DNA of 63,304 nt, counting the filler, from Reticulomyxa filosa (Eukaryota; Protista; Foraminifera), in NCBI GenBank assembly GCA_000512085.1. It is 9 parts of 9 records of this genome, joined end to end, with 100 filler letters (N's around TTAATTAATTAA, not from the genome) between each part and the next. Parts side by side here need not be neighbours in the genome. Positions count along the whole stretch, not along the records: positions 22,549 to 38,683 come from ASPP01021912.1; 8 more parts are not named here. One strand, 5' to 3'. The notes beneath the pieces are model-generated. The model was not told the origin of the DNA and did not search any database. It saw nothing but the letters and a program-made list of their open reading frames with translations. The translations under genes and the position numbers were made by a program. Below are positions 9,516-38,683 of this stretch, in pieces. Numbering within the stretch: the stretch's first letter is position 1; each line of letters opens with the position of its first letter.

Positions 9516-10592
9516 ATGACTATTTCTCCAAAGTTGCAGTTTTGGTGTTATAAAGATGCAATTGAAAATTTGTACGTGTCGACAGTAGGACAACCGTCGT
9601 TAGTGTTGACTCCGTTGCAGGCATGGGAACAAAGCAATCCATTGTATTTCCAAATGTGCCTTTTGATTTGGACGAACGTGTGGACATTCACACGTGGAAA
9701 ATTGTACGATTGGTCAGCAGTAGACCGACTGTGGTCAATATCGCCGATACTATATGGCATCTGTTATGTTTTGCATGACCTGTACCACTCAGGGAACAAA
9801 CTCACCTGTCCACGAAACGCAGTGATTGCATTACTAGTGACACTGTGGGGATTGCGACTGACGTGGAATTTTGCGATCAAAGGAGGATATAACGTTTTGT
9901 TTTTTCCAAAAAAAAAAATAGGCCCCACGTAACCTCCTCTTAAAAAATCCAGTCCCCACAAATATGTATAGAACAAAGAAAGCGAAGACTATCGCTGGGA
10001 AATCGTTCGTAATTGGTTCAAGAGTATTCGAATCCCATTTGTTGGACGAATTTGCCAAGAGTTGTTTTATTTGTTATTTGTTAACTTCTATCAAAACACC
10101 TTGATTTGGAGCTTTGTCGGTATTCCAATGTATTTGACCTATGAAATAAGCAAAATCACCAGTAGCTGGAATACCATGGACTACTCATTGGTTTTTGCTT
10201 GGAGTGTATTCTTTTGGATTGAAAGTATTGCCGATTATCAAATGTTCCAATTTCAAACTCAAAAAAAAAAATTTTTACGTAATGAATTAAAAGTAAATGA
10301 TGCTCAAAAAAAAATTTATGAAAGAGGCTTTTTTACCGGAGGTTTGTATAGCCTCAGTAGACATCCTAACTATTTTGCTGAACAATGCATGTGGTGGGTT
10401 ATCTCTTTGTGGCCCATGTTTTTGCAAAAATCAGTCAACTGGAGCGGTGTACCTGCTTTTTTGTTGACTCTACTTTTCCAAGGCTCTACCACTCTGGCAG
10501 AACAAATCTCTTCTCAAAAATATCCTGATTACAAAATCTATCAACAACGCGTTTCTAGACTCATCCCGTGGTTTGCTCGACCAATGAATTAA
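9516..10592 (+). CDS. DUF1295 / steroid 5-alpha-reductase-like membrane protein
   Basis: WSAVDRLWSI, LWGLRLTWNF, EDYRW (exon 2), ESIADYQMFQF, GLYSLSRHPNYFAEQ, YPDYKIYQQRVSRLIPW. One intron ~9893-9971. Confidence 0.9.
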
Positions 10593-10978
10593 TCATGGTA
10601 TCATTTTATTTCTGGACTTTTTTTTATGTGTGTGATAAATAGGCAAAATTTGTATTATTCCAAACATTACACATTTTTCGCAATTATATAATGCAAGAGT
10701 ATTCATTGTTTTTTTTTTTTTGCCCGAAGAAATTTTTACCATTTTCCATCCTTAAAATATTTCATTATGTTGCCGGAATAAAAACGTTGAAATGTGTTAC
10801 AATAACATATTTTTCAGTGATACCAATTTTCAACTTGATAAGGTGATATTTCTCATCAACAAAATTCTTTTTTAAAAAAAGAAATATGCATTCTAAGCTT
10901 GGTATAGTTAGGGGTTTAGCACAAAATAAATTTCTATTTTTATTTGTTCACATGGCTCAATAGCACTCTTTCATCTAA

Positions 10979-22548: not shown

Positions 22549-22969
22549 AAAAAAAAATGATCTTCAGGGTGTTGTGTTTTTTCATTGCAAAATATTGATC
22601 ATTTTTCTTGTTTGCGTGTACTGGGATCTGCGCTTGTCTTTTTCTTGGAATATAGAAATAGCATTTGCTACGTCAAAAAAACTAAAATTGATCCTTTTTT
22701 AAAAAAATACGTATAACTCTTGCTGCTTAATCATGTTGTATGTTGTCCAATTTTTTGCTCGTAATATTTGGATTTGATATCGCTTTTAATTAGATGTTAC
22801 TTTAAAATAAATAAATTAATTGAATGTTTTCGTAAAGAATGAACATTAGGGGGTACAAAACACAACACAATAATTGTGTCGCCACAACACAAATTAAAAG
22901 GGAGATTTTAGTTCAAAAGTTCTTTCTTTCTTTCTTTTGCTTTTTCTTGCAGGTGGGTTACGACAAAGG

Positions 22970-25900
22970 ATGTCGTTTTTAATTACACTTATATTTGCTC
23001 TGAGTGGTTTTGTATTCTATGGAAATTGTGTGAATTATGTCGGAGAGTTTGGGGTGACCGCTAACACCTTGCCATGGACGTTGTACGGTGCCATGATTGG
23101 TTATCGTGCACAAGACGAAACAGTAGTGTTGGTGGGTGGAAGATCAGGCGAAAAAGAAGACCTGAACACGGACTATATTGAAATAGATGTGTCGAATATT
23201 CGACTAATTGAAGGAACAGTGAACGTTACAAGCGGTGCAGCGATTGAATCGCCGCACGTAATGTTCGAATACAGGAGCGTTGCCATTGGGGATGCCATTT
23301 ATTATTTGAGCGTAGGAGAAAATGGACGAAATGTGACATGGGAAATATTTAACGTAACATCAAAGACAAACACAACAAAGACAGGGAAGGATTTGGGAAT
23401 GATGATTACAGGCGTGACACTGTGTTCAGATAGTGAAACGCGAATCTTTGTAAGTCTGTTTGGAGTGAACCAAAGCAACTACTATTCGCGATGCATGGAG
23501 TACGTTGTGGAAACTGATACGTGGCAACAAGTGACGAACGATGTGCAGCAAGGATTGTTTGCATATTATGGGTCGTGCGTTTGGCGAGAATCAACGAATG
23601 AAATCTGGTATTTTGGAGGAAAGGATTATTCGACGGAAGAGCCTTTGTCGAATATCTGGTCAGTGGAATACGCTACAGGCAATGTTTTGAACCGAGGAAA
23701 TTTGATCATTCCACGAATGGTGAGCGGTGCATTTCTCGTCAAGGACGCGGATGGAATCGAAAATGTACTCGTGACAGGGGGTTGTTTGAAGCCGGATGAA
23801 CAAAAATGTGCAATCAGTGTGACAAGTACGGAAATGTACAACCTCACTGCGAATATGACATCTGCATTTGCGCCGTATTTGAATGAGCCGTTAGCACAAT
23901 TTGCTGCGATTATACGCAACAATGTGTTGTGGCTATTTGGCGGTACTTCGGACAATGGCAACTCGAATGTGATTCAATATCTGAATATGTCGATGACCAC
24001 ATGGGATCAATTGACCACGCACACACAAGGTGTTGAGACCATTTGTATCAGTACAGATTCATGTAATTTGACCGATCCTTCAGTATACGTAACGATGAGT
24101 TTGGAAGACGCGATCGAAAAGGTCATTTGGTTGTCGAGCAACGTCTCGAGTGAAACGGTCATGTATTTCGGGTCCAGTTGGAAATTGACATCGAATCGAG
24201 TCTATCATTGGTTTATCGGTCGTAACGCCAGTATCCGAATGGACTGCTTGCAAAGTGTGTGTACGATTACTGGTATCAATAGCATATTCATGTCCTTGGC
24301 ATTGTCTAATGGCAATGATGATATCAATGTTGGTATTGCAATACAGAACATTCGTTTGATTGTAATCCCCGGAGAATCCTCATCCTCATCGACGTCTCCC
24401 TCGGGCCAAATATTGACCACCGTATTGGACCAAACAAGCAATGTCAACATCACAGTACAAATCCGGATGACGAATATTACATTTAACGCGAATCACGAAG
24501 CGATGTACGGCATCTTGATTCGATCCTCTGTTGGAAGGAACAATCTATTGGTATTGGAACACGTGACAGTACTTAACACCACAAGGCCATTCCTGCTATT
24601 GGAAGGCAGTGATATGAACCCAACTGGCTGGGACGTGGAACTGAACGACATTACTGTTTTCAATCACTCCTTCAGTGATGGAGAAGACGTGTGCAGTTCG
24701 TCCGTCTTCTGTCTGACCTCGGTAGGCAATGTCAACGTGTCTCACTGGTCTATTTGGCATTCCTTTGTCTCGGCAAGTGCGCTCATTATCAACGGCTTTA
24801 ATCGTGTCATGACGCAGAATCTGCAATTGAACGACACGACCACAAAAGAGGCGCCTCTTGTTCTTTCGAATGGCATTTCGAGCACCGTGGACTTTGTTCA
24901 GTGCAGCAATACCAACGGCATGCAATCCGGCTGTATTGTCTTGGACAGCATATCGACCGTGGACGTGTCCAATGTGTACTGCATCCTGTCGAATGGTGAC
25001 AACGGCTGTGTCACGGCAACAGACCTTGGAAGCGTGCAATTGGACCAAATCACCTGCGTTGAGTCCAATGGCATTAATGCAGGATGCATCTACATCGAAA
25101 TAGCCCAACAGGCATTTCTGGCGAATATTACTTGCAGCAAGACGACCAGCGTGATGTGGAGCGGCTGCGTCGCGGCGATCGGAGCCGATAACTTTGCACT
25201 GAATGGACTCGTATGCAATACCACGGACCCCTCCAGGGCAGCGTGTGCATTTGTCAAAGACATTGCCGATGCATTCATCTCCAACGCAGATTGCAGTTCC
25301 TCTATCGGCAATGACACGGGCTGTGTGGCGGCCAGATCCTTGTCGAAACTCACTTTGGAAAACATTTTGTGTAATGCCTCGCAGGGCACCACCGCGGCGT
25401 GTGTGTCGCTCAGCGACCTCGTCATGGTCAACGCAACGCGGCTGATATGTAACAACACGCTTGGCTTTTACAGTGGCTGTCTTCTCGCATGGAGTGTGCA
25501 GTACATTATTTTGACCCAACTCCAGGTGATCAACACGTTCGGCTTTTACACCGGCGCCGTGTATGTCATTCAGAGTAACACTCAGTATTCCATCATCCAA
25601 GACTCGTTGTTTGATGGCAATGTGATGGGAGAAGTCGCAATTAACTATGGCGTGGGGGCACACATGGAAGGAGTTTACGCTCAGATTTCTCGTTGTGTGT
25701 TTACCAATAACCACGGTACATTAAAAAATAAATAAATAAATAAATATATCATATACGATACACACACACACACACACACACAAATCTAAATGGGGACGTG
25801 TTTGTATAAATAAAGACCCTTTGGTGGAGCTGCAGTGAGTTCCTCAATGCAAGAATCAATTCTACTCGAAGATTGTTCGTTCAGTGGCAACAGTGCGGAC

Positions 25901-28397
25901 AAAATCGGAGGTGTAATTTTCCACAACTTGGGAGATTTGACATTCAACCGCTGCAACTTCAGTAACAACTTTGCCGACCTTGGCGGCGCAATTGGCGTGC
26001 TGGCGCCCGGTTATCGAATGTCGCTATGGAACTGCTCATTCACGCAGAACGTGGCGTCGGCGCAAGGCGGCGCAGTGATGATTTTGGAAGGCAACTACGA
26101 CATGTTGGACACGCACTGCGAGGATAATCTGGCTAAATCGGACGGCGGATGTTTGTACGACGGAGACGGATATATAATATGTCAGTCCATGTTGAATCAC
26201 ATTGCACGTTCAACGGTGATAAATAACCGCGCGCAGCAAGGAGCAGGACTCTACATTCACGGCTGTTTGTTGTCCATGCGAGAACGATCGTCTCCAATAA
26301 CACGGCGTCGCAAACTGGCGGAGGCATAATGATCGACGTGTCGACTGGCTTCCATCACTTGCAAAATGTGACGTTACAAGACAACTCAGCTGACAGTTCG
26401 GGAGGAGCGATCACGTTGACTGGTGGCAATATCTTGATCGACCACTGCGACATTCACAGCAATCTCGCGACTACATTGGCCGGTGGAGTCTACATTACCC
26501 ATTCGGAACAATGGGGCATGAACGTGACCGTCGTTAATTCCACACTCTACAACAATGTCGCCGGAAGTGGCGGGGCCATTGGCGCCACGTCTTCCGCTGA
26601 TCCTTCGTACTTTGAATGGCAGACTCATCCGATGCTGCTCATATCGTCCTCCGAACTTGTCAACAATCACGCACAAATGGATGGAGGCGCCCTGATGGTA
26701 CGCACTGGCAATGTTCGCATGAATCTCAATCGAATCCAAGGCAACACTGCCCAAAAAAAGGAGGCGGCATTTACGTCGTCCAGGGCTGGGCCGAGGATGT
26801 TGGATCCACGTTTGTGCAAAACTACGCGTCCACAGGAGGTGGACTGAGTTGCGATACCTCTCTCGTCCAACTTACAAACACTTCATTCAACAAAAATACG
26901 GCCTCTCTCGACGGAGGGGGTTTGTGGCTGCAACTGTGTCCCGACTTTGTATTCAGCGGACTCAGCTTCAAACAGAACACGGCCAACTTCAGTGGCGGCG
27001 CCACATTTGTGCAGCAGACTGGCGTTTGTGCGATTTGCAAACAATACAATAACACCTGCACGTATACAGGCAACCAAGCTGCCTTTGGCAGTGATACCGG
27101 CACAGGGCCGCAGCAGCTGCTATTGAATTATGTGAAGAAGACCAAATCGGTAAATCAATTAAGCGAAATCATCCTGGAAGGCACGTTGTATGATGCCTTT
27201 GGACATGTGGTCACGCAGTCGGAAGATACCATTGTGCTATCTGCAATGGTCGAAATGAATAAAAACGTTGAATTGCAAGGACGATTTGAAGACACCTTTG
27301 AAGGGGGAAAGGCCTCGTTGGACTTTTTCATTGTTCCTTCCGATACCGTCATCCACACCAATGCCAACTTCGATTTAACTGTTCGAATTGGCACCAATAT
27401 TTATCCATTCAATCAAACTTTTAATGTGCGTTTTCATAACAGCATCTACGCTCCCAAAGCTTGGACTATTGGAATTAACTCCGCATTTGGCGCTGTTGGG
27501 ATTATTTCTGTCCTAGTCACTGCCTTGCTTATGTGGCGGTATCACGAATCTGCGATCATTCGTGGTGCTACTCCGCCTTTTTTGGTTGTCATATTGTTTG
27601 GCTGCTTTTTGCTCAGCGCCTCCATTATTGTTTTGCCATTCATGCCCCAGAAGGTATCATGTCTGCTGTTGCCATGGCTATTGCATCTCTCTTTTGTCCT
27701 TATCTTGGCACCGATCACTGGCAAAACGTGGAGGATCTACATGATTTTTTATATGGCCAGTAAAAAATTTAAGCGCTTCAATTTTACAACGTGGAAACTG
27801 GCTCTGTTTTTCATCATTTTGCCATTGGTAGTCGTCGTCGCATATTTGTTGACTTGGACCTTTTTGCAGAAGGACTGGACCCAGTGGGAAGTAGAAACAA
27901 ATGGAGAAAACAAGGAATACTGTTCCTTAGAAAGTCTGTTTTTAACAATTAGTCTGACATGCGGAGCTGTTCTTTTGCTGTGGCTGGTTCGACTCGCCAT
28001 TGGAGTGAAAGGTGTTCCCAAAAATTTCAATGAGTCCTTTTGGCTGGGAGCTGCTATTTATACTTTGGCTTTGGTTATGTTATTCATGATTCCAATCAGT
28101 GTGATCAACTCAGTTCCACCAGAGGTTAAACAAACTCTGGGAGGAATTGCTGCCTGGATTGCATTGGAAGCAGTGCTGGCCTTCATATTTTGGCGAAAAT
28201 ATTACATGATCTGGTTCCACTCAGAGGAAATGAATACAAGGAAATCAACTACCTCTCCTGAAGACTCAGGAATGTCAAACACTGAAAGTTCGGGCATGGC
28301 CGCAAGTGATTTATCCAGTGATCGAGGCTCTAAAAGTGGTCGATCAACGAGCCCTAGTGCAACAGGTCAGACTATTAAAGGTAGACCTACCATGTAA
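22970..28397 (+). CDS. Giant class C (7tm_3-like) GPCR: signal peptide, Kelch propeller, right-handed beta-helix (Cys-paired and GGA[I/V]/FxxN repeats), 7TM; ~1,780 aa
   Basis: Signal MSFLITLIFALSGFVFYGNC. Kelch GG motifs (VVLVGG, IWYFGG, VLVTGG, LWLFGG). Repeats FSGNSADKIGGVI, FSNNFADLGGAI, FTQNVASAQGGAV, FKQNTANFSGGA. Seven hydrophobic helices with IIRGATPPF, KTWRIY and VPKNFNES. One intron ~25716-25815; single-base frameshifts near 26285 and 26755. Confidence 0.88.
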
Positions 28398-28763
28398 AAG
28401 GATACTGTCCACTTTTGTTGTCTTGTTTTATCTCTTTTTTTTTTCCGTTGTTTGTTTTGAGTGTTGAATTGTTGAATTGGCTCGGTGTGTGTGCACTGTT
28501 GTGCACAGCATAGGATAATGTAAATAAATTCATTTTCTTGTTGCAAAGTTACATGTCAACTCCTTTAACAAAAGCTGCTTTTCAAAGCTGATTTTATTTT
28601 ATTGGGAATATTTTCGATAACACATGTTTTGTTGATGCGAAAAAAAGTGCTAGGATTAGCTTCTTCAGTGGAATAACTACAACAATTTCAAAAGTGTTCC
28701 ATCCGACACCTTTTAAAAAAAGATCGAAATTTCAATTTACGAGACAAAAGTTGTGAAATTACA

Positions 28764-31384
28764 TCACATTTGACGGTTATCATTTGTATTATTCAAGTTG
28801 TTGGAACTTAAGACTGCTTCATTTGTTGTTAAAAATTCAATCTGAAGCTTGAGCTCGCCTTGTTCGACCCCTTCAAGTTTCCACCATTTTTGAACTGGCC
28901 GTTGAAACGTAGTAAAATCAACTGGAATGTTTACCTGCCCCATAAATTCATTCCTGCTCCAATTATCGTGGTCCTTTAGTTGAACCTGAAGTATACCACA
29001 ACACTCAATTTTTTAAAATGAAGTCAGCAAAACAGAGTAGTGAGATGCATACCACCAACTCCAAATCGTGTAACAATTCAGTTTGCACTTGAAACAGGAA
29101 GTCCTCATTCCAAGTTGGGTTCAATGTATTTTCTTTAATTGTCGTCTTCTGTTTCTCACTGTTATTTCCTAGTTTTAGGGTGACATATGGATCTGATGAC
29201 CCATTTTTGTCTTTCGCTGCCAAGTTTCTTGCGCCAACTACTAACACCTGAAGATGATGTTGTGCCATTCCATAACAATGAAGGCAACAAAAACATACAA
29301 TGCTTGGGTAACTCTAAGCACTCCGCACAAATCTTGGACAGATTTTTCTTTTGATTTTCTTTTAACCATGTTCTTCACTGCAATGTTCGTTTTGACTTTG
29401 TGCAATGTCTTAGTTAAGAAAAATATTTTTTTCTCTTTTGAGGTTGGAGAATTTGGATATACACTGTATCGCTGATTTTTGTCGGTGTTTGAGAGTGATT
29501 GCTCTCGTTCTCTTTCAGGAGACAAAGTTTTACCTTTAGGCCGTGACATTGTCTCCTCTAAGTAATTTGTCACATCCTTTTCATTATTTCTTCCTTGCAC
29601 TTTTTTTTTTGTCAAACCTATATATAAGAAATATGGATCTATCTTTTTTTAAGATTCCTATTGATTTAGAAAACAAACTGTTGTTGTCAGGAAATATACT
29701 GCATGTCGAAACGTCTTCACTTTCTGATTCTGGTAGTAAAAATGGTTCATATTGCAAAGAAATATGAACCATTCCACGTGCAACATTTTGCAGTGAGTGC
29801 CAAGTTTGCTCAATTGTGTCTGCTTTTATGTCTCGTAATGAAATGACTACATCACCCAAAGGATCATCGTTTGTCGAACAGTTAGCGCTTTGCACTGACA
29901 CGAAAAGACTTTCAGTTGATATGTCAGTAACTGTAAACTCAAATTTCTCTTGCCACACTATTTTATTCCATTATAGAAATAAAGTGTAATAGTAGCTTAC
30001 CATTTTTTTGTTGTGAGTGACTACAGAATATCTTTATGTATTCCGAACACACCTGGATTAACAGTGTTACTCTTTTTTTTTGTTGTTTTTTTAAGCTCGG
30101 ATCGAATCCATAATTTGCACACAGTATCCGGTATACCAAATACGTCTTTAGTCATCAAATTTCTAGCTTCAATAATTTCTACTTTCAAAACTCCTTTTAA
30201 CGGTTGGAGTTGCGTCGAAATCTCTGTTGCTATTTCATCTGTCAGAGGATAAATTATTTCGTGTGGGAATGCTAAGTATTCATCCAACAAGTTTTCAATT
30301 GTTGACTATTTATTTTTAAAACAAATAAGTAACAATTTCATTTCTGGAACAAAATTGGCTTTTAAGACCAAAATTAAGTGTTGTCGTTGATGAATGATAA
30401 AACAAACAAAAAGTAAATTGTATACATTTAGCCAAGGAACAAATCCTGGAATACCACTTAAAGGGACTTTTATGGCTGATAGTTGATAATCCAGTACAGG
30501 TTTTTCTATGAATGTGATTCTTACAATATCAAAGAATGGAAAATGATATACCAAATTGGAAAATGTTATCCTCAGAGTGCCTCTGATTTGGATATCCTTT
30601 AATGCTGCTTGGACACTGACAACTCGATTGCCTGCACTTATTGTTATGCAAGGCTTTCCTCCACAAAACACAAATTTAATATCAAAAATGACTTCCTTTG
30701 CCGATTGTTCTTTGTCATAAACCTATTTTCATGAATTTAGAAGGATGAGAATATTGAGCTAAAACTAAAAAAGGTCAACGACTAGTATGCAAGTTTTTAT
30801 AAGTAGTTTTAATGAAGAAACCACTGAAAAGCAAATGGCTGAAATAAAATTGCGCACAGTTTAAAGATATATACATCTTTCACCTTGACAGCAATGAATT
30901 GTGGTGGCATTGTTCCGAGGTCGATTGTACCCAACATCAACTGACTCAAGAAAGGTGGTTTGTAGTTTGCAAGTTTTGGGTTAGCGTTGTGTCTAATTGC
31001 ATCTTCAGCTGAAACCTTCAAATAAGGCCACAGTATATCTGAAGCATTATTCAAAAATTTGACTTTTTCCCAGTCGGGAAATTTGACCCAATCTGGCAGA
31101 GATCTCATGACAGATTTTACCAGTTTTGGATTTTTGTCCAATCGCAAGAATTTGTTTTCGAGTTCTTTGCGATCAAATTCAAGCAAATAGTAGTGTGAGG
31201 ACAATATACACGCACCAAGTAGTGCCGCATATATAAAACCAGCCTGCCAATATCCCAAAATATACATAATTGAAACGAAAATACCAATTCTTAGCAGTGC
31301 TGAGTTGTCCCATGTGTGATTAATGTGCTTCAACATGTACAAAACTAGTTCGTACAATTTTAACTGTCTTAAATAATTTGACTG
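28764..31384 (-). CDS. Synaptotagmin-like / tricalbin-type membrane tether: TM, SMP domain, two C2 domains; start not resolved
   Basis: TM hairpin, then [18 protein letters not shown]...LWPYL and LGTMPPQF (SMP). C2[18 protein letters not shown]...NTVNPVWQEKF. C2[27 protein letters not shown]...[10 protein letters not shown]...[13 protein letters not shown]. Stop at 28764-28766. Confidence 0.88.
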
Positions 31385-32109
31385 TCAGATTATGAGATTG
31401 TTTCATCATCAGATTTTCTTTCCCCTGTTATAATTTGTGTTTTTAATTTTGCTTATCGTTGTTCCATTTATCCTAAATTGCAAAATTGAATTAGGTCAGT
31501 GACAGGCTTTGGATCAACACACAGATGTCCTCACACTTCCGTCCAATGTGAATGTTTTTTGTTATATAATATGGAACGAAAGAATGAATTGTTATCTACT
31601 AAATTGTAAGTTTTCTGCTATAACCTTAAAAATCTTATATGGATCAATTTGCTCTTTTCTCATTTAATTTACATTTTATCAAAATTTTTTACAGAGGTTT
31701 ACTGGACCTTTGTGTTTCAACAACTGATACTGAAGAAAAATTATTATATCTTAATTTTTAAACAAAAATACTGATATTATTGAAATTGAAATCGAAATAT
31801 GTGTAAATGACCACTTATATTTTGGTTATTGCTGTGTAGTGCAAGTTCTCGTGAAACACAAACTTTTTTGGAAAAAAAAAATAAAAATTAAAAAAATAAT
31901 ACGGAAAATGATGAACAAAAAAAACAAGAAAAAGGAAAGACTAATCTGCCCACACTTTTGAACAACGGAAGGAGAAAACAAAAAAAACAGATGACAAAAA
32001 ACTGTATGCTTTCTTTTATATATTCTTTCTCACACACGTAATAATAAGTAAGCACAGATAGGACAATGCATTCAATGCACTGAACCAAAAAATAAATCTT
32101 GGAAAAAGG

Positions 32110-35100
32110 TCAATCTTTGGATCTTTCTTCATTAACAGCCGCAATTGATGTTCCCTTTTGCGATAATTTGTTGTTGGCCATTTGTTTCACTAATCCCCAA
32201 TTTGCTCTTCTGCGGATCTGTGTCATGATACAAATAATTAGCAATTTTTATATTTTTGAGCATTTTTCATTTTAGAAAAAAAAAAGTTATCGCAAAACTT
32301 GTTGTTCAGTCCTGGTCAAACATCGCGATTTTTTTTGTGCAGCGTCTCTTTCGTAGTTTTTGATATTTGGCAACAAAGGTGAATAATCCACATTATTTAG
32401 TGTTTCCAATGTGAAGATGACAAAGCTATCGAAAGGCCTCTTCCTCACATCATTTCCCTCACTTTCATTATTGTTAATGGCGACGTGTCCATTTCCAACG
32501 ATTCCCTCGTTGTCAGTAGTGTACTCACTTGGTGTAGGAGGTTCACTATAATTTGTATTAAGTTTGTTATCCCCAATGTCCGATTCTGTGATATCGCTGA
32601 TGCCACTGTTAATGATAATTTGGGTCGCATCCGTCCTTATCGATCCATTTATTCGAACTTCTCCGACACTTATTCCGGGTTTGGTATACTGTTTTCCAAT
32701 CTTAAAAGGGAAAGGCGGAACATTTCCATAGGCCAACGCTTTTGCAATTGTTTCTTCAGCTTCTCTTTCTTTGGCTTCTTTTTTCGTCAAATATTGTTGC
32801 ATTTTTGTCCAATATGATATGTCCTTGCTTTGATAAATTTTCTCCACATTTGCGCTGGCCAATCGCAATTGTTGATTGGGATAATGTCGATTTTGGAAAA
32901 AGGCTTCTAAGAGCGGAGGCAAAAACCCCTTACGATCGTAATCCACCAATCGTTGCATAGATGGTTCTTTCCACGCCGCAATAGCGCGTTCTGCTACGGG
33001 TTGGCGGGATGAGATCATGGATTGGGTCAATTGTTTTGCTGAGGTGATCAAAATAGGCTTGTACAACGAATAGTCAAATCCATCCTGATGGTTGAGCAAC
33101 ACATTAATAATATTTACAACGCCCATAATGAATATTTCCTCTTTTTGTGGGGATTGCTTTGGCCAATAGCATAGCAATCCTCGCAGAACAACGACAGCAC
33201 CCAACTTATCTTTTGCAACATAATTGACGCAGCATTGTGTCAATTGTTCCCAGTACTTTTTCAAGCCACGGCACTTGTGTTTGTTGTTATCGAAAAAAAG
33301 AAAAAGTGAACAGAAGCGATTTAATGTATATTTGTTGTACATATAATTTATGTTGTATACATACCATAACACATATCGTATATACATGTATATGTATACG
33401 TCACAACGTAAAAATACCTTGTGTAGCGGTACTAACACATTACTTAAAAATTTTTGCCATGAATCTTTGATAGGAACAGTGAGTCCTGGAATGATAGCAC
33501 AAATGATTTGAAGTAACTCAATGACACCATTGAAATGGTCCGTGCTTGGACAATGAATGATTCGATACAAATAATTGCAGGCCAAATCAATGACATGTGT
33601 TCGCAGCTTGAGACAGCGGCCATAAATTTTGTGTATGATCATCATCAGGTACGCCCGTTCCCTGTGATCCTCGCTGGCGAATAATTCGATTAGTTTTTGC
33701 AAGAACGATCCTGGCAGATATTTCTTGTACCATATTTCATGCACAACACACAGAACAAATGGTGATCGACACATATGTCATTTGCGTATTTGCGTCAATC
33801 AAACAAAAGACATCCCTTCAATCACACTTACCTCCATGACTTGTGCGGTGACATCCGGGTTATTGATAATACGCCACGTTAAGTCGTACACGAGTTTGAG
33901 ATGTCTCCAAGTGGGATCTTCATAGACAGTTTCTTTTTCAAATACTTCGTCATTGAAGAACATTAGCGATGGCGGACGAAACTGGTATGGAAGTGAGCGA
34001 AATAGATTGGCACTGATAGTTTTCAGACACTCTTCAAACATATCTTCGCTAAACCAAGTGTTTCGTGAAACAAACTCTGTTAAATCGGCCAATAGTTCTT
34101 CTTTCTTTTTAATCATTTCCAGTTTGACACGAGTCATATCATTGAAATCACAAACTGCGCGACAAAGTTTCAATTTCAATCGAAACATATTTTCTCTTTC
34201 ACTGCGATGAATGTCAATAAGCAATGGCGGATTGGCTTCGTATAAACTTTTGAGAGGCCCTTTTAAGGTTATCTTTCTCTTTTTGATTTTTGTGCTGATT
34301 ATTTCGTCTCGTAGTTGTTCTGTTCGTCCGTCTTTATCGTCATATAATGTTATCCATGTTGCCAAAGGCGTATATTCTTTGGCGACTCGTTCAAGTTTTT
34401 CGTGTCTTGGCGTTGTCGAGCCATTCTTTGTGTCGCTTTTATTTTGTTTCTTCCTTTTGAACCATGAAGAGAATACGCCACGAGTTGTCCCAGTATCTGT
34501 CTCGTCGTCACTTTCTTGCTTTTCGTCACCGTCATCACTGTCATTGTTATCGTCTTCTTGGAAATCTCGTTCAGGTAAATCATCGCCCTTTTTCGGACTG
34601 GTTTCAGTCTGGCCATTTGTTTTGTGAATTCTATCTGGACTCATCACTGCCTCTAAATCTTCAATCGTGTACACCATCCTTTCTTCTCTCTGAGTCGTTG
34701 CACCTGTTTCCAAAGTGTTGTCTTTATCTTTGTCTTTGGATTTGTTGTTTATTTCTTGTGACTGTGTCATTCCATTTGTCGCTTGCAATTCGTCATTGTT
34801 TTCGTTTGCATGGTTTATATTTGGGTCATGTTTGCTTTTATATTTCACATTTGTCAGTTGGTAATCTTTGTTCGTCTCAATATTTTGTTTGTGGATTTGT
34901 GCTTCTCCAGCAATGGTCGCATGTTCATTGTCTACGTCGCTGCTGACATAGTCGTCTGTCACCTCAATCGCATGGTTGCCATTATTCTCATCATTGTCAT
35001 CCTCTTTTTCATCCTCGGACATTGGGCTTGTGTCCTTGATTGCGTGCTTGAGATGTGCACTTGTCTTGTTCGCGTTCTGGGCACCCGGACTAAGAGGTGA

Positions 35101-36433
35101 TTTATTGCCATTGGTAACTGTGTTTGCTTTGTTGATATTGTTCGTCGGGACAGGCGCACTACCAACGTTCCTTGCGTTTTCTGGTTCTATGGTTGGAGAA
35201 ACAATTGCACATGAAAAATAAGTTTGCTCAACAACAAACAAATAAGCAATAATATTAAACACGTTCAAGGAATTTTCTTTTGTTTGTATATTTGTATGCA
35301 TGTGCAAACCTATCTTTGTAGGTAAAACAAATAATCCGTGATCCGGACGACATTCAAAGTAATACTTGTTTTTAAATGTTCCATTATGTGTGCCCTTTTT
35401 TTCATCTAGTTCCAGTCCGTACCATACACCCTTCAAAGAACAAAAGCCAATCATCTGTTTGAGAATGCAAAAGTTGAGCTGTCTCAACAAATGGAAACAA
35501 AACAAAACAAACACATGTGAACTGTGTCAAAATGCACCGGTCCGAAATAGCGGATAATTCCTCGGACATTTGTGTTTTTTGAAACATACACTCGATCACC
35601 TACTGTGCATTTGTATTTCTTAAGTGCTGGTATTGCACATACATACATACATATATACATATACATACAAACACAAATTAATCGTTCTCAGCTGTTGTTT
35701 TTTTTTTTTTTTGTTTAGTTGGGGAAACAAAGAGATTGGGGGGGGGGGGGGAAAAAAAAAAGTACAAGGAAATTTTTTTGGAAATTGTGATACTGTTTTG
35801 AATATGCGCCCATCTTGTGCACATTTGAAACATACATTGAACAATTTTTTCAATTGAAAGCACTGTGACCCACACTGCAGACTCTTTCGATATCACTTTA
35901 TCTATCTTACCATTCTGAGTCACTTCCAATCGAACCCAAACCCCGTCACGCTTTTGTTTGAAACCAATATGTGTTACTTTGCCCTCCATTTTATTCTTCA
36001 ATCGAACCTAATTTTAAAATCTCTTTTGTTTTGTTTTTTTTTCCTCTCTTTTTTTTGTAATAAAAGTTAGACAGACTGCTCTTTTTATTTTCATAAACTG
36101 TATTTCTCATTTAACTTTGTCACCTACAAATGGAATTATCTTTGGCTCACGTTTCGGTGAAAATGACACGTTTTGAAAGTTAGGCTGTTTTTCTGTATGC
36201 TTACTATTGCTCGATGTTGCCAACAATTTGCCACCTGCGTTGCCTTTGTTTGTTAAAATTGTGTTGTTGATCTCATTTCTTTGGCTTTCACTGCTATTTT
36301 TACGACTTCTTTCCTTTTGTTCTGGGTTGTCTTTTTTAGGTATGGTCGGTTTTGCTATGTTGCTGTTTCGAGGTTTGGGAAACACAACACCACTTGTGTC
36401 ACTTTCCTTTCTTTTTCCCCAAATTTTCTGCAT
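32110..36433 (-). CDS. PP2A regulatory subunit B56 (B') with N-terminal CAP-Gly domain(s)
   Basis: B56 core: KLKLCRAVCDF, ISANLFRSLP, EDPTWRHLKLVY, ELFASEDHRERAYL, HKIYG, FNGVIELL, VLVPLHK, LLCYWPK, VAERA. CAP-Gly: VGDRVYV...GIIRYFGPVHFDT-GVWYGLELDEKKGTHNGTFKNKYYFECRPDHGLFV. Confidence 0.9.
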
Positions 36434-36790
36434 TGATGGTTATCCAAGCCTGTCTTGAGAGAGTTGGCTCTTAAACTAAATCAATGCAGCTTAGCAGAAA
36501 TTTAAAAATCGTTGAATATTGTTTTATCTAATATTCAACCAAAATCGCCTAAAATTTGTTTGCACTTTCGGTAAAATTTTCAGCAGAGTTATCTACCTCT
36601 TTCTAAACAGATTTGTCCAAAATAACACAAAAACGTGTACAACTAATTGAAACTTTTATTTTACAATATTGCTTTGTATAATGTTTATTTTTGTTCGTAA
36701 TTGGAACGTTTAAACGTTGGGAAGCGCTTGGAAAAGTTTTTTCATAGAATTTTGTTTATAATTAGGATTTAATTTACTGGAAATAAGAAT

Positions 36791-37775
36791 ATGATCCGTA
36801 GAGATGCTCGTTTACGAAGAGAATACATTTTTCGCAAATCATTGCAACCAAAGTATCGAGCAGAATATAAAATGAAAAAAAAAACTGCAGGAGGCAATCG
36901 ATGAAGGAGAAAAAGTACCAACTAGTTTGCGGACAAGATTTGATCGTTTGAAATTACAAATGAAAGCAGATGATGTCACCACAAAAGACGTTGGAAAAAA
37001 TAAGGTAAGTTACATAGACGATGAGTATGCAGAAGCTGGTATTAAAGACCCCAAAGTAATAATGACGACGTGTCGCGAACCAACAAACAAATTAACGCGT
37101 TTTGTGAAAGAAATGAAATTGTGTTTCCCCAATGCAACCCGTGTCAATCGAGGTTTGTGTGTTGCTTTTTCTTTTGCTCTATTTTTATTTCTGCAAGTTT
37201 TTATTAAATGAAATAACCAACACCAAAAAAAAAAAAAAGGTAACATTGATGTAAAAGAATTGGTTCGTTTGAGCAAAGCAGCAGGATTCACGGATTTGGT
37301 GATATTTCATGAACACAGCGGCATCTGTGACGGTATTATTGTTTGCCACTTACCATATGGACCCACAGCTTATTTCAGTGTCACGGATGTTGTCGCCCGA
37401 CATGATGTCCCAAAAAAGAGCTTGGCAAGTGTGAGTGAACAAATTCCACACTTAGTTTTCAATAACTTTCAAACCTTGCTCGGTGAGCGAGTCTGCAATG
37501 TATTGAAATTTTTATATCCTGTTGTACCAAATCAAAAGATTTCCCAAAAAATTCGACGAGTTATTTCATTTACAAATTTCAATGACTTTATCTTGTTTCG
37601 CCATCACATTTATCGTAAAAAAGAAAATAACGAAATTGAGTTGGTTGAAATTGGACCACGATTCACTATGAGATTGTACCAGATCAAGTTGGGAACAATC
37701 GATCAGAAAGAGTCTCCCATTGAATGGGTACTCAGGCCTTACTTCAACACCAGTTGGAAAAGAAAAGCATTGTAA
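36791..37775 (+). CDS. IMP4: U3 snoRNP protein IMP4 (Brix domain)
   Basis: MIRRDARLRREYIFRKS, IDDEYA, DPKVIMTT, RVNRGN, HLPYGPTAYF, FRHH, LVEIGPRF, EWVLRPY. Intron 37153-37239; A-run frameshift near 36880. Confidence 0.95.
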
Positions 37776-38683
37776 AAAAATTTCAATTATTTGTGTTCCC
37801 TTTTTTAACAAAATTTCAATTAAACTACCTTGGCTTATTGTTTTTATTTCTTATTTGAACTTATTGTCTTCGGTGTCGGCTTGGCTCTTTATAAGACTGG
37901 TTGAAAAATAGTATTTCATCATGCCTTCATTATCAAGCTGCTGATCCGGTTGTTCACCAAAACACGAATCTCCGTTTATTTTATTTGAGATTTTCCAAAG
38001 CAAATTGACTCACGATGACCAGATAGCGTTTTTTTATTGTTTTTTTACTGTTGCCATAATTTTAAATTATTTCAATTAACATAAATTTTTTGATTTTTTT
38101 CAACAACAAATATAAATTTCATTGCAACAGGTAATTATCAGTTAAGCACAAGAGCTCACCGCCAAGCAGGTACCTTTTTCACGGGGCTAGCAATTCGTAA
38201 AAAAATTCTGGCCACTTCATATCTGTTCACTTGTCAAAAAGTTGTTTTCTTTGAAGGGATTTGTTAATCTCCAGTTTAAATCTTAGTTATCTTTCAAGAT
38301 TTGAAGGTTATTTTGAAAAAAATTGATTGGAATTTCAACAACGAAAATTTTGAGAAATTTCTGAACGATATGATAATTTGATGTTGATTGCACGAAAATC
38401 GAATTTATTATAGTGATATCAAATTATCTGATAGTAGTATCTGGATGCTGAAAATAGATTCAGAGAATTTGTGTTATTTTAATATACATAAAGTTAAAAT
38501 ATTGTGAAAAAAGGCAAAATTAGTTAGAAAACAGTTTATGTTATTATCACAACACTTGTACGATCGTTTTAAAATTTTTTTGTGCAAAATATATTTATTA
38601 CACATTGCAAAAAATTTTCATAGTATCACTGATTTGCAAAAAATTAATGGAATTAATTTTGATAATACAATTAATTATTTAAT

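What the first reader, a model, noticed from the sequence alone, without database searches (positions are those of the whole stretch)
22970..28397. Giant class C GPCR with an adhesin-like Kelch + beta-helix ectodomain instead of a Venus flytrap
Seen: one reading path of ~1,780 aa (one intron, two single-base slips) running signal peptide, Kelch-type GG repeats, a long run of FxxN...GGA[I/V] repeats, a beta-rich stalk, then a 7TM with KTWRIY and VPKNFNES. Established: those 7TM motifs mark the glutamate/GABA-B (7tm_3) family, whose animal members use Venus flytrap ligand domains; FxxN/GGA repeats form pectin-lyase-like beta-helices, as in chlamydial Pmp adhesins. Inference: a rod-shaped surface receptor holding a propeller at its tip, coupling contact or polysaccharide/prey recognition to G-protein signalling. 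I do not know this architecture as characterised.
Basis: partly seen in the sequence, partly recalled or inferred. Interest (0 to 1): 0.82.

Follow-up and report, generated by a model that had tools for sequence, protein, structure and literature searches.

The report
Beta-helix-tipped class C GPCR of Reticulomyxa
This is a real, roughly 1,775-residue surface receptor gene of a foraminiferan (Reticulomyxa filosa or a close relative) that joins a glutamate/GABA-B-type seven-helix signalling domain to a long rod-like beta-helix with a probable Kelch propeller at its tip; receptors with the rod-plus-seven-helix plan occur in many amoeboid and predatory protists, and I found no study of them.

Summary
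On the + strand, 22970-28397 reads as one ~1,775-aa path. It runs: signal peptide, six-blade Kelch-like region, ~900 aa of right-handed beta-helix (the last ~460 aa carry Chlam_PMP repeats), a beta-sandwich stalk, then a 7tm_3 domain (Pfam E 2.2e-35).

The path has one intron and two 1-nt frame breaks. Both breaks are single-base gaps relative to two paralogues. The public Reticulomyxa filosa assembly holds the same layout (contig ASPP01010108.1). There it is annotated as two genes, split at an intron that cuts a PMP repeat in half.

A high-confidence model of an intact paralogue (pLDDT 85) shows beta-helix, stalk and a class C 7TM. The Kelch call is moderate: Pfam E 5.8e-11 but below the curated cut-offs, and that region folded poorly.

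The beta-helix/PMP + 7tm_3 plan is not unique. It occurs in Bolivina, Pterocystis, Pigoraptor, Vermistella, Trichosphaerium and metagenomes. Only the Kelch cap looks Reticulomyxa-specific. I found no paper describing the architecture.

Function (contact or glycan sensing coupled to G proteins) is inference. No sequencing run was available, so assembly error versus pseudogene remains open.

Verdict: a new variant of a known kind, of moderate interest.

The parts
22970..23029 (+). Start codon and signal peptide (aa 1-~20, MSFLITLIFALSGFVFYGNC)
   Evidence: Direct reading. The hydrophobic N-terminus is conserved in paralogue P0005.
23075..24019 (+). Probable six-blade Kelch-type beta-propeller (aa ~36-350)
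   Evidence: Pfam PF24681 E 5.8e-11, PF24981 E 2.9e-08, Kelch_4 at 21.5 bits against a 21.6 cut-off. Paralogue P0005 passes the Kelch_4 and Kelch_1 cut-offs. All ten nearest ESM-Atlas clusters are Kelch, at scores of 0.85-0.86. GG/W blade spacing of ~50-55 aa is visible in the sequence. The AF2 model here is unreliable, pLDDT ~30.
24020..24331 (+). Linker or cap region without a recognised family (aa ~351-454)
   Evidence: No Pfam hit. Low model confidence. Conserved only with P0005.
24332..25715 (+). First half of the right-handed beta-helix, including ~25-aa repeats with a cysteine ladder (aa ~455-915); end of exon 1
   Evidence: AF2 pLDDT 60-90 over residues 500-870. VIA-align: cyanophage Pam1 tailspike Z 28.0 (405-908), AlgE4 Z 24.3, Vag8 Z 24.3.
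25716..25815 (+). Intron: AT-rich with a (CA)n run, and an in-frame TAA at 25733-25735. It splits one PMP repeat (FTNNH(G) | PFGGAAV).
   Evidence: The intron sits at the same position in L001 (GG|GTAATT...TTAG|ACC) and at the 5' end of L002 (ACAG|ACC). The conserved acceptor is at 25815. With the sequence as it stands, the in-frame alternative acceptor is at 25829.
25816..27077 (+). Second half of the beta-helix: about 12-15 Chlam_PMP-type repeats (N.A...GGA[IVL])
   Evidence: Chlam_PMP E 1.2e-11, 2e-07 and 1.4e-04; Beta_helix E 4.2e-04. Motif list. The equivalent part of paralogue P0003 models as a beta-helix with pLDDT >90. It matches Vag8 at Z 31.0 and AlgE4 at Z 29.9.
26282..26284 (+). 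Frame change 1 (frame 2 to frame 1): one base missing relative to both paralogues
   Evidence: tblastn is collinear across the site. The DNA alignment shows GCGAGA-ACGATC.
26753..26759 (+). Frame change 2 (frame 1 to frame 0), inside an A7 run
   Evidence: CCCAAA-AAAAGG against both paralogues.
27090..27437 (+). Beta-sandwich stalk between the beta-helix and the membrane
   Evidence: Equivalent to P0003 residues 415-530: 7-8 strands, pLDDT 80-90. No Pfam family.
27462..28193 (+). Class C (7tm_3) seven-transmembrane domain with KTWRIY (TM3), VPKNFNES (before TM6), RKYY (TM7) and the TM3/ECL2 cysteines
   Evidence: PF00003 at 123 bits. mGlu7 E 1.3e-14. Paralogue model against Drosophila GABA-B: Z 27.2, rmsd 2.2 A. 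Against mGlu1 4or2: TM-score 0.63. C603, K624 and C690 are nearly invariant in alignment A1.
28194..28397 (+). Ser/Thr-rich cytoplasmic tail and stop codon
   Evidence: 17 S+T among the last 46 residues. Modelled as disordered in the paralogue.

Best explanation
Bases 22970-28397 are one two-exon gene of Reticulomyxa filosa or a very close relative. It encodes a ~1,775-aa type-I-like class C GPCR. A signal peptide sends a ~1,465-aa glycosylated ectodomain outside the cell. That ectodomain is a probable Kelch propeller on top of a ~900-aa right-handed beta-helix rod (roughly 16-17 nm by inference), followed by a small beta-sandwich stalk that leads straight into a glutamate/GABA-B-type 7TM.

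The two (possibly three) 1-nt frame problems are most likely errors of a poor draft assembly.

Shown: the domains, their order, and conservation of the whole layout in a paralogous locus. Also shown: the beta-helix + 7tm_3 plan occurs in other protists.

Inferred: the rod and propeller bind a surface-bound or polymeric ligand, such as polysaccharide, prey or substrate surface. Because a rigid beta-helix cannot close like a Venus flytrap, the signal would reach the 7TM by ligand-driven re-orientation or clustering of receptor dimers, or by pulling force through the stalk. The 7TM would then activate heterotrimeric G proteins.
For: Domains:
- Pfam 7tm_3, Chlam_PMP and Kelch-type hits.
- mGlu and GABA-B sequence and structure matches.
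- Beta-helix folds on both sides of the intron.

One gene:
- In R. filosa contig ASPP01010108.1, the paralogous Kelch gene (P0005) is followed 126 bp later, on the same strand, by the PMP+7tm_3 gene (P0002).
- The gap is a GT-AG intron in phase. It cuts a PMP repeat in two (FINNHG|PFGGSAM) at the same place as in the window and at the 5' edge of L002.
- The downstream half has no signal peptide of its own.
- The beta-helix continues across the junction.

Frame breaks as errors:
- Each is a 1-nt gap against both paralogues.
- There are no in-frame stops in 1,775 codons.
- The paralogous contig has its own two frame breaks, in A5 and T6 runs.
- Paralogue P0003 is intact over 837 aa.
- The R. filosa assembly is described as highly fragmented, with split gene models (PMC5784254).

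Secretory route: 33 N-glycosylation sequons and 42 Cys in the ectodomain.

Family: the window's 7TM sits in a fully supported clade of 17 sequences, and all 10 members that could be labelled carry beta-helix ectodomains. Several relatives in Bolivina, Pterocystis, Pigoraptor and others come from transcriptomes as single ORFs.
Against: - No RNA or read data could be obtained, so the splice and the frame repairs are not shown directly.
- Frame change 1 lies in only a 2-base run, which is not a typical homopolymer error.
- The conserved splice needs a further missing G.
- The Kelch fold was not recovered by structure prediction or by PDB sequence search.
- G-protein coupling, ligand and dimerisation are untested. 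The homodimer prediction gave no verdict.
- The 7TM has R in place of the class C TM7 proline (RKYY against PKxY).
Confidence: 0.62

Rival explanations
1. The locus is a decaying paralogue (pseudogene). The 1-nt deletions are real, and only truncated products, or none, are made. Intact family members such as RFI_11702 carry the function.
For: Two to three frame disruptions in 5.4 kb. One lies in only a 2-base run. The family has several paralogues in R. filosa, so redundancy is plausible.
Against: No in-frame stop in any of the four coding pieces. All class C motifs and the repeat pattern are intact. The paralogous contig shows the same kind of homopolymer breaks, which points to assembly quality rather than repeated independent decay.
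Confidence: 0.2
2. These are two separate genes, as in the public annotation: a secreted Kelch + beta-helix protein, and a separate PMP + 7tm_3 receptor translated from an internal ATG.
For: NCBI models of the paralogous locus are split this way (RFI_13968 and the 'adhesin-like protein'). An ATG exists at 25847. An in-frame TAA follows exon 1.
Against: The split falls inside one PMP repeat, and a canonical intron in the same phase restores it in three loci. The downstream half has no signal peptide for an ectodomain of more than 500 aa. The annotated start of P0002 lies inside the intron. The beta-helix is continuous across the junction. Transcript-derived relatives in Bolivina and other taxa carry ectodomains of 800-2,000 aa in one ORF.
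Confidence: 0.06
3. It is one gene, but the ectodomain is an enzyme or pure adhesin. It might be a polysaccharide lyase, epimerase or depolymerase like its best structural matches. The 7TM would then serve mainly as a membrane anchor or non-G-protein transducer.
For: The best fold matches include AlgE4 epimerase, PL6 lyases and phage depolymerase tailspikes, at Z 24-30. Adhesins (Vag8, PfbA, EtpA, pertactin) also match. G-protein coupling is untested.
Against: Sequence identity to those enzymes is 6-14%, and no catalytic family was hit by Pfam. The 7TM keeps the class C functional motifs (TM3 Lys, TM3-ECL2 cysteines, NFNE, K-x-Y) under evident constraint across the family. That would be unexpected for a mere anchor.
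Confidence: 0.1
4. It is programmed recoding. The A_AAA_AAG heptamer at 26754-26760 would be a real -1 frameshift or transcriptional slippage site.
For: The A7 run lies in slippery register in the upstream frame, and a -1 shift gives the conserved KGGGIYV continuation (note 4).
Against: Both paralogues read straight through with no frame change and no A-run there. The other frame break is not slippery. The contig's relatives show homopolymer breaks elsewhere.
Confidence: 0.02

Closest known systems
Metabotropic glutamate, GABA-B and GPR158/GPR156 receptors (class C GPCRs, Pfam 7tm_3)
   Same: The 7TM domain matches in sequence: PF00003 at 123 bits, mGlu7 E 1.3e-14. It also matches in predicted fold: Drosophila GABA-B Z 27.2 at rmsd 2.2 A, and mGlu1 TM-score 0.63. 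It keeps the TM3 K(T)xRI lysine, the TM3-ECL2 cysteines, the NFNE motif and K-x-Y in TM7. Like GPR158 and GPR156, it lacks a Venus flytrap.
   Different: There is no Venus flytrap and no cysteine-rich domain. The ectodomain is a ~1,465-aa Kelch-like + beta-helix + beta-sandwich assembly. TM7 has R where class C receptors have P. Ligand, coupling and dimerisation are unknown.
Reticulomyxa filosa paralogues RFI_13968 + 'adhesin-like protein' (ASPP01010108.1) and RFI_11702 (ASPP01008539.1)
   Same: The paralogues have the same domain order, the same intron position and the same stalk and 7TM. Identity is 36% over the N-terminal half and 56-62% over the C-terminal half.
   Different: They are annotated as separate or truncated genes with generic names. 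The window copy is a distinct paralogue with its own frame breaks.
Beta-helix/PMP + 7tm_3 proteins of other protists (Bolivina argentea, Pterocystis sp., Pigoraptor spp., Vermistella antarctica, Trichosphaerium sp., metagenomes)
   Same: These carry Chlam_PMP and/or Beta_helix repeats directly upstream of 7tm_3. The Bolivina and metagenome members share a 7TM clade with the window at full support.
   Different: None shows the Kelch-like N-terminal module. Some carry a Kringle domain instead (P0031, P0082). All are uncharacterised.
Chlamydial Pmp and other autotransporter or TPS beta-helix adhesins (Vag8, pertactin, EtpA, PfbA)
   Same: The GGA[ILV]/FxxN repeat family is shared (Chlam_PMP E 1.2e-11), as is the right-handed beta-helix fold (Vag8 Z 31.0 over 357 residues).
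   Different: This is a eukaryotic protein anchored by a 7TM signalling domain, not a bacterial outer-membrane beta-barrel. No autotransporter domain is present.
Adhesion GPCRs (class B2)
   Same: The concept is shared: a very large adhesive ectodomain on a 7TM, possibly sensing contact or force.
   Different: The 7TM family is different (7tm_3, not 7tm_2). No GAIN domain or tethered agonist was detected.

Membership tests
Class C GPCR (Pfam 7tm_3, PF00003) | 7TM domain scoring above the family's gathering threshold | tested here: met
   123 bits against a 33.5 cut-off, E 2.2e-35, covering profile positions 7-249 of 251.
Class C GPCR (Pfam 7tm_3, PF00003) | Seven-helix bundle superposable on solved class C receptors | tested here: met
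   Tested on intact paralogue P0003 (56% identical), not on the window protein itself. The model has seven helices at 536-804. Matches: GABA-B Z 27.2 at rmsd 2.2 A; mGlu1 4or2 TM-score 0.63 at rmsd 2.8 A.
Class C GPCR (Pfam 7tm_3, PF00003) | Conserved TM3 lysine (KTxRI), TM3-ECL2 cysteine pair, NFNE before TM6, PKxY in TM7 | tested here: met
   KTWRIY, C (KVSC) and C (KEYC), and VPKNFNES are present. K624, C603 and C690 are nearly invariant in A1. TM7 reads RKYY: K and Y are kept, but P is replaced by R.
Class C GPCR (Pfam 7tm_3, PF00003) | Venus flytrap (ANF_receptor/PBP-type) ligand domain and cysteine-rich linker, typical of the family but not universal | tested here: not met
   No ANF_receptor, PBP or NCD3G hit in any piece. 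The ectodomain models as a beta-helix plus beta-sandwich. GPR158, GPR156 and GPRC5 show that the feature is not obligatory.
Class C GPCR (Pfam 7tm_3, PF00003) | Constitutive dimer | tested here: inconclusive
   The homodimer prediction for the paralogue's stalk + 7TM gave no verdict.
Class C GPCR (Pfam 7tm_3, PF00003) | Activation of heterotrimeric G proteins | not testable with these tools
   This needs biochemical assays. Rhizarians in general are reported to hold most GPCR-pathway components (PMC3971589).
Chlamydial Pmp / autotransporter adhesins | Chlam_PMP (GGA[ILV], FxxN) repeats forming a right-handed beta-helix | tested here: met
   Chlam_PMP E 1.2e-11, 2e-07 and 1.4e-04. Beta-helix model matches Vag8 at Z 31.0.
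Chlamydial Pmp / autotransporter adhesins | C-terminal autotransporter beta-barrel in a bacterial outer membrane | tested here: not met
   The C-terminus is a eukaryotic 7tm_3 domain, with no autotransporter hit. The gene has a spliceosomal intron and eukaryotic neighbours.
Kelch-type beta-propeller | Kelch repeat or propeller profile match, and a six-blade fold | tested here: inconclusive
   PF24681 E 5.8e-11 (42.5 bits against a 50 cut-off), PF24981 E 2.9e-08, and Kelch_4 at 21.5 against 21.6. Paralogue P0005 passes the Kelch_4 and Kelch_1 cut-offs. Atlas neighbours are all Kelch at 0.85-0.86. AF2 pLDDT is ~30 here, and there is no PDB sequence hit.
Adhesion GPCR (class B2) | 7tm_2 domain preceded by a GAIN autoproteolysis domain | tested here: not met
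   No 7tm_2 or GAIN/GPS hit. The 7TM is 7tm_3.

The most novel reading that the evidence does not exclude
Beta-helix-ectodomain class C receptors are an old, unrecognised branch of GPCR signalling. It is shared by phagotrophic and amoeboid eukaryotes across supergroups (Rhizaria, Amoebozoa, Holozoa, Haptista). A rigid glycan- or surface-binding rod, capped here by a Kelch propeller, would turn contact with prey, substrate or cell-wall polysaccharide into G-protein signals. The activation mechanism would differ from Venus-flytrap closure, working by clustering or force through a beta-sandwich stalk.
Probability: 0.3. Interest if true: 0.78.

Novelty: new variant of a known kind. Interest (0 to 1): 0.55.

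Why it matters
Class C GPCRs are understood almost entirely through the Venus-flytrap "clam-shell" model. A family whose ligand-binding part is a rigid beta-helix cannot work that way. It therefore offers a natural test of how else a class C 7TM can be switched on.

Its occurrence in foraminifera, centrohelids, several amoebozoans and the predatory holozoan Pigoraptor suggests a link with surface contact, adhesion or prey and glycan recognition. These are processes for which protist receptors are almost unknown.

On the practical side, the public Reticulomyxa annotation splits these genes. As a result, the full architecture, including the Kelch-like cap, is invisible in protein databases.

Tried and rejected
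- **Sequencing runs:** none was listed for 22900-28450. Read laying was therefore not used, and neither the splice nor the indels could be checked.
- **Glockner et al. 2014 genome paper:** not held in the library. What I say of it rests on citations in PMC5784254 and PMC4758236.
- **Literature searches:** 'Chlam_PMP' with '7tm_3'; 'polymorphic membrane protein' with GPCR, beta-helix and protist terms; 'PbH1' with GPCR; '7tm_3' with Rhizaria; and Reticulomyxa with GPCR, adhesion or G-protein terms. None found a description of the architecture. PMC10445921 lists 'PbH1' only in its abbreviations.
- **AF2 of the N-terminal 915 aa:** the alignment had only two sequences, and the Kelch region failed at pLDDT ~30.
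- **PDB sequence searches of the N-terminal piece and of the Kelch-region alignment:** nothing significant.
- **ESM-Atlas search of the 7TM piece:** only a weak lead, a chytrid EGF + 7tm_3 cluster at 0.77.
- **Pfam on the stalk and on residues 376-915 of exon 1:** no family.
- **Complex prediction, homodimer of P0003:410-800:** no verdict, score 0.00. This is not evidence either way.
- **Programmed -1 frameshift at A_AAA_AAG:** considered and rejected, because the paralogues read straight through.
- Each piece was searched by reference, and the intact paralogue P0003 stood in for the C-terminal half in folding.

Full report
**What is in the sequence**

The piece (22549-38683) is a 16,135-bp eukaryotic contig. 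On the + strand, four long ORFs follow one another:
- 22937-25735, frame 2, first ATG at 22970
- 25835-26329, frame 2
- 26329-26847, frame 1
- 26616-28397, frame 0

None of the coding pieces holds an internal stop.

Pfam gives the following:
- 7tm_3 at 123 bits (E 2.2e-35, cut-off 33.5) in the last ORF.
- Chlam_PMP repeats in all three downstream pieces (E 1.2e-11, 2e-07, 1.4e-04), plus Beta_helix.
- Kelch-type propeller profiles in the first ORF: PF24681 E 5.8e-11, PF24981 E 2.9e-08, and Kelch_4 at 21.5 bits against a 21.6 cut-off.

They align to mGlu7 (E 1.3e-14) as KTWRIY/KTYRIY and GVPKNFNES/GVPENFNEA. TM7 reads RKYYMIWFHSEE against PKVYIIIFHPE.

**Whose gene it is**

The nearest database proteins are from Reticulomyxa filosa (assembly GCA_000512085.1):
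- An 847-aa 'adhesin-like protein' (P0002, 62% identity).
- The 837-aa RFI_11702 (P0003, 56%). Both of these match the C-terminal half.
- The 947-aa RFI_13968 (P0005, 36%), which matches the N-terminal half.

The window is therefore a further paralogue from R. filosa or a very close relative. Its neighbours are ordinary eukaryotic genes: a C2-domain gene, a B56 subunit and a Brix protein.

**One gene or two**

In contig ASPP01010108.1 (L001), the P0005 gene (7031-9874) is followed on the same strand by the P0002 gene (10001-12585). This is the same arrangement as in the window.

Reading the junction gives exon 1 ending ...TFINNHGG|GTAATT and exon 2 beginning ...AATTAG|ACCTTTTGGTGGATCTGCT. The spliced product is FINNHG-PFGGSAM, which is a single PMP repeat (FxxN...GGxA) cut by a phase-2 intron.
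- The annotated start codon of P0002 lies inside this intron.
- Contig L002 begins inside the equivalent intron and shows the same acceptor, ACAG|ACCCTTTGGGGGCGCT.
- The window has ...TFTNNH, then CACGG TACATT...(CA)n...ATAAAG|ACCCTTTGGTGGAGCTGCA.

The position is thus conserved in three loci. Three further points favour one gene:
- The downstream half has no signal peptide, although it must place more than 500 aa outside the cell.
- Structure prediction puts a right-handed beta-helix on both sides of the junction.
- Relatives recovered from transcriptomes carry 800-2,000-aa ectodomains in single ORFs.

I put the two-gene reading at about 6%.

One detail remains open. With the window sequence as it stands, the conserved acceptor (25815) is in frame only if the donor has one more G (GGG as in L001). 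The as-is in-frame alternative uses the acceptor at 25829 and loses the PFGG half-repeat.

**The frame changes**

tblastn of P0002 and P0003 runs collinearly through both sites without losing residues. DNA alignments show exactly one missing base in the window relative to both paralogues:
- GCGAGA-ACGATC at about 26283.
- CCCAAA-AAAAGG in the A7 run at 26753-26759.

The paralogous contig L001 has two breaks of its own, in an A5 run (~9800) and a T6 run (~10810). The public gene models bridge these with a false stop and a false intron. P0003 is intact over 837 aa in a single exon. PMC5784254 also notes that the R. filosa assembly is highly fragmented and splits gene models.

Assembly error is therefore my preferred explanation, and a real pseudogene the main rival (about 20%). 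No sequencing run was listed, so this could not be settled.

The A-run happens to sit in slippery register (A_AAA_AAG). I reject recoding because the paralogues need none.

**Architecture and fold**

Pieces were searched by reference, and the intact paralogue P0003, aligned with 19 relatives (A1), stood in for the C-terminal half.

Its AF2 model is confident (mean pLDDT 85):
- Residues 1-~410 form a regular beta-helix.
- Residues 415-530 form a beta-sandwich stalk with no Pfam family.
- Residues 536-804 form seven helices.

VIA-align places the two main parts as follows:

| Part | Best matches |
|---|---|
| Beta-helix | Vag8 passenger Z 31.0 (357 aligned residues, rmsd 2.7 A); AlgE4 epimerase Z 29.9; NosD Z 27.2; also phage tailspike depolymerases, PL6 lyases, and the adhesins PfbA and EtpA |
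| 7TM | Drosophila GABA-B Z 27.2 (rmsd 2.2 A); GPR156; mGlu2; GPR158 |

Foldseek agrees for the 7TM (GABA-B1b E 1.2e-09; mGlu1 4or2 TM-score 0.63).

The model of exon 1, built from only two sequences, is poor for residues 1-490. It is usable for 500-870 (pLDDT 60-90), where it is again a beta-helix (Pam1 tailspike Z 28.0, AlgE4 and Vag8 Z 24.3).

The helix therefore spans about 460 aa of exon 1 plus about 420 aa of exon 2. At roughly 25 aa and 4.8 A per turn, that is roughly 16-17 nm (inference).

The ectodomain (~1,465 aa) holds 33 N-glycosylation sequons and 42 cysteines. The cytoplasmic tail is Ser/Thr-rich.

**The Kelch cap**

In favour:
- Pfam E-values are significant, though under the curated cut-offs.
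- The paralogue passes the Kelch_4 and Kelch_1 cut-offs.
- Six GG...W units about 50-55 aa apart are conserved between the two paralogues.
- All ten nearest ESM-Atlas clusters are Kelch families, at scores of only 0.85-0.86.

Against:
- The fold was not recovered.
- PDB sequence searches were blank.

I call it probable, not shown. Among 157 collected relatives, only P0005 shares this N-terminal module.

**How common the plan is**

An exhaustive HMMER search with the 593-aa piece found 5,026 proteins at E <= 1e-3. Many of the best hits match across PMP repeats, stalk and 7TM together.

Pfam and source look-ups confirm Chlam_PMP and/or Beta_helix directly upstream of 7tm_3 in these taxa:
- Bolivina argentea (Foraminifera)
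- Pterocystis sp. (a centrohelid)
- Pigoraptor chileana (Holozoa)
- Vermistella antarctica and Trichosphaerium sp. (Amoebozoa)
- Rhizamoeba saxonica, weakly
- Several metagenome contigs
- Two proteins with Kringle + PMP + 7tm_3

The two best-matching Pigoraptor proteins (P0054 of P. chileana and P0125 of P. vietnamica) align to the query across the PMP repeats and stalk, but Pfam calls only 7tm_3 in them. The P. chileana protein that carries a Chlam_PMP call is P0029.

Of the collected proteins with a 7TM match, 117 in all, 32 have three or more PMP-like motifs upstream.

In a FastTree of 110 7TM domains, the window falls in a fully supported clade of 17. All 10 members that could be labelled have beta-helix ectodomains. 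The other beta-helix receptors form several further clusters (10 changes against ~25 in shuffles; at least 3 forced by well-supported branches). This is a quick tree with long branches, so it does not decide between one origin and several.

**Comparison with what is known**

This is a class C GPCR by every 7TM criterion I could test. It lacks the Venus flytrap and cysteine-rich domain, as GPR158, GPR156 and GPRC5 also do.

It is not a Pmp autotransporter, because there is no beta-barrel and the gene is eukaryotic and spliced. It is not an adhesion GPCR, because there is no 7tm_2 or GAIN domain.

De Mendoza et al. (PMC3971589) already noted that 7tm_3 recruits species-specific ectodomains in protists. 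Plasmodiophora has 7tm_3 fused to solute-binding domains (PMC4815078). I found no paper that describes a beta-helix/PMP or Kelch ectodomain on a class C receptor.

**Mechanism (inferred)**

A rigid solenoid cannot signal by domain closure. I see three candidates:
- Binding of a polymeric or surface ligand (glycan, prey or substrate surface) that re-orients or clusters receptor dimers through the stalk. This is the most likely.
- Tension transmitted to the 7TM, by analogy with adhesion GPCRs.
- An enzymatic ectodomain, which is less likely because no catalytic family is detected and identity to the lyases is only 6-14%.

The dimer test gave no verdict. G-protein coupling is untested.

**Verdict**

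The function is plausible but unproven.

The beta-helix + class C plan is a widespread, unstudied variant rather than a one-off. The Kelch-like cap appears specific to Reticulomyxa.

I score it as a new variant of a known kind, interest 0.55.

Noticed in passing
window 32287-35514 (- strand): A single 571-aa ORF (33799-35514) carries a CAP-Gly domain (aa 28-68, E 6.5e-14) and the start of a PP2A B56 regulatory subunit (aa 430-560, E 1.5e-22). The rest of B56 follows after a GTAAGT intron in ORF 32287-33774. A microtubule-binding CAP-Gly fused to B56 is an unusual architecture, in an organism famous for microtubule dynamics.
   Followed up: partly
L001 (ASPP01010108.1) ~9790-9810 and ~10805-10820: The paralogous R. 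filosa locus has its own two frame breaks, in A5 and T6 runs. The public gene models hide them with a premature stop (the last ~37 aa of RFI_13968 are out of frame) and a false intron in the 'adhesin-like protein'.
   Followed up: yes
window 26754-26760: The A7 run at the second frame break lies in the register A_AAA_AAG, a classical -1 slippery heptamer. The paralogues have no frame change there, so it is treated as an indel.
   Followed up: partly
window 29005-31357 (- strand): A multi-exon gene with at least two C2 domains (E 5e-21 and 1e-06) and an N-terminal hydrophobic region, resembling an extended synaptotagmin.
   Followed up: no
window 36927-37775 (+ strand): A Brix-domain ribosome-biogenesis gene (E 1.4e-25), split by one short intron.
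   Followed up: no
P0031 (2,338 aa, EukProt transcript) and P0082 (2,291 aa, Logan contig): These are relatives with an N-terminal Kringle domain ahead of ~1,900 aa of PMP beta-helix and a 7tm_3 domain. This is another unreported cap on the same receptor plan.
   Followed up: partly
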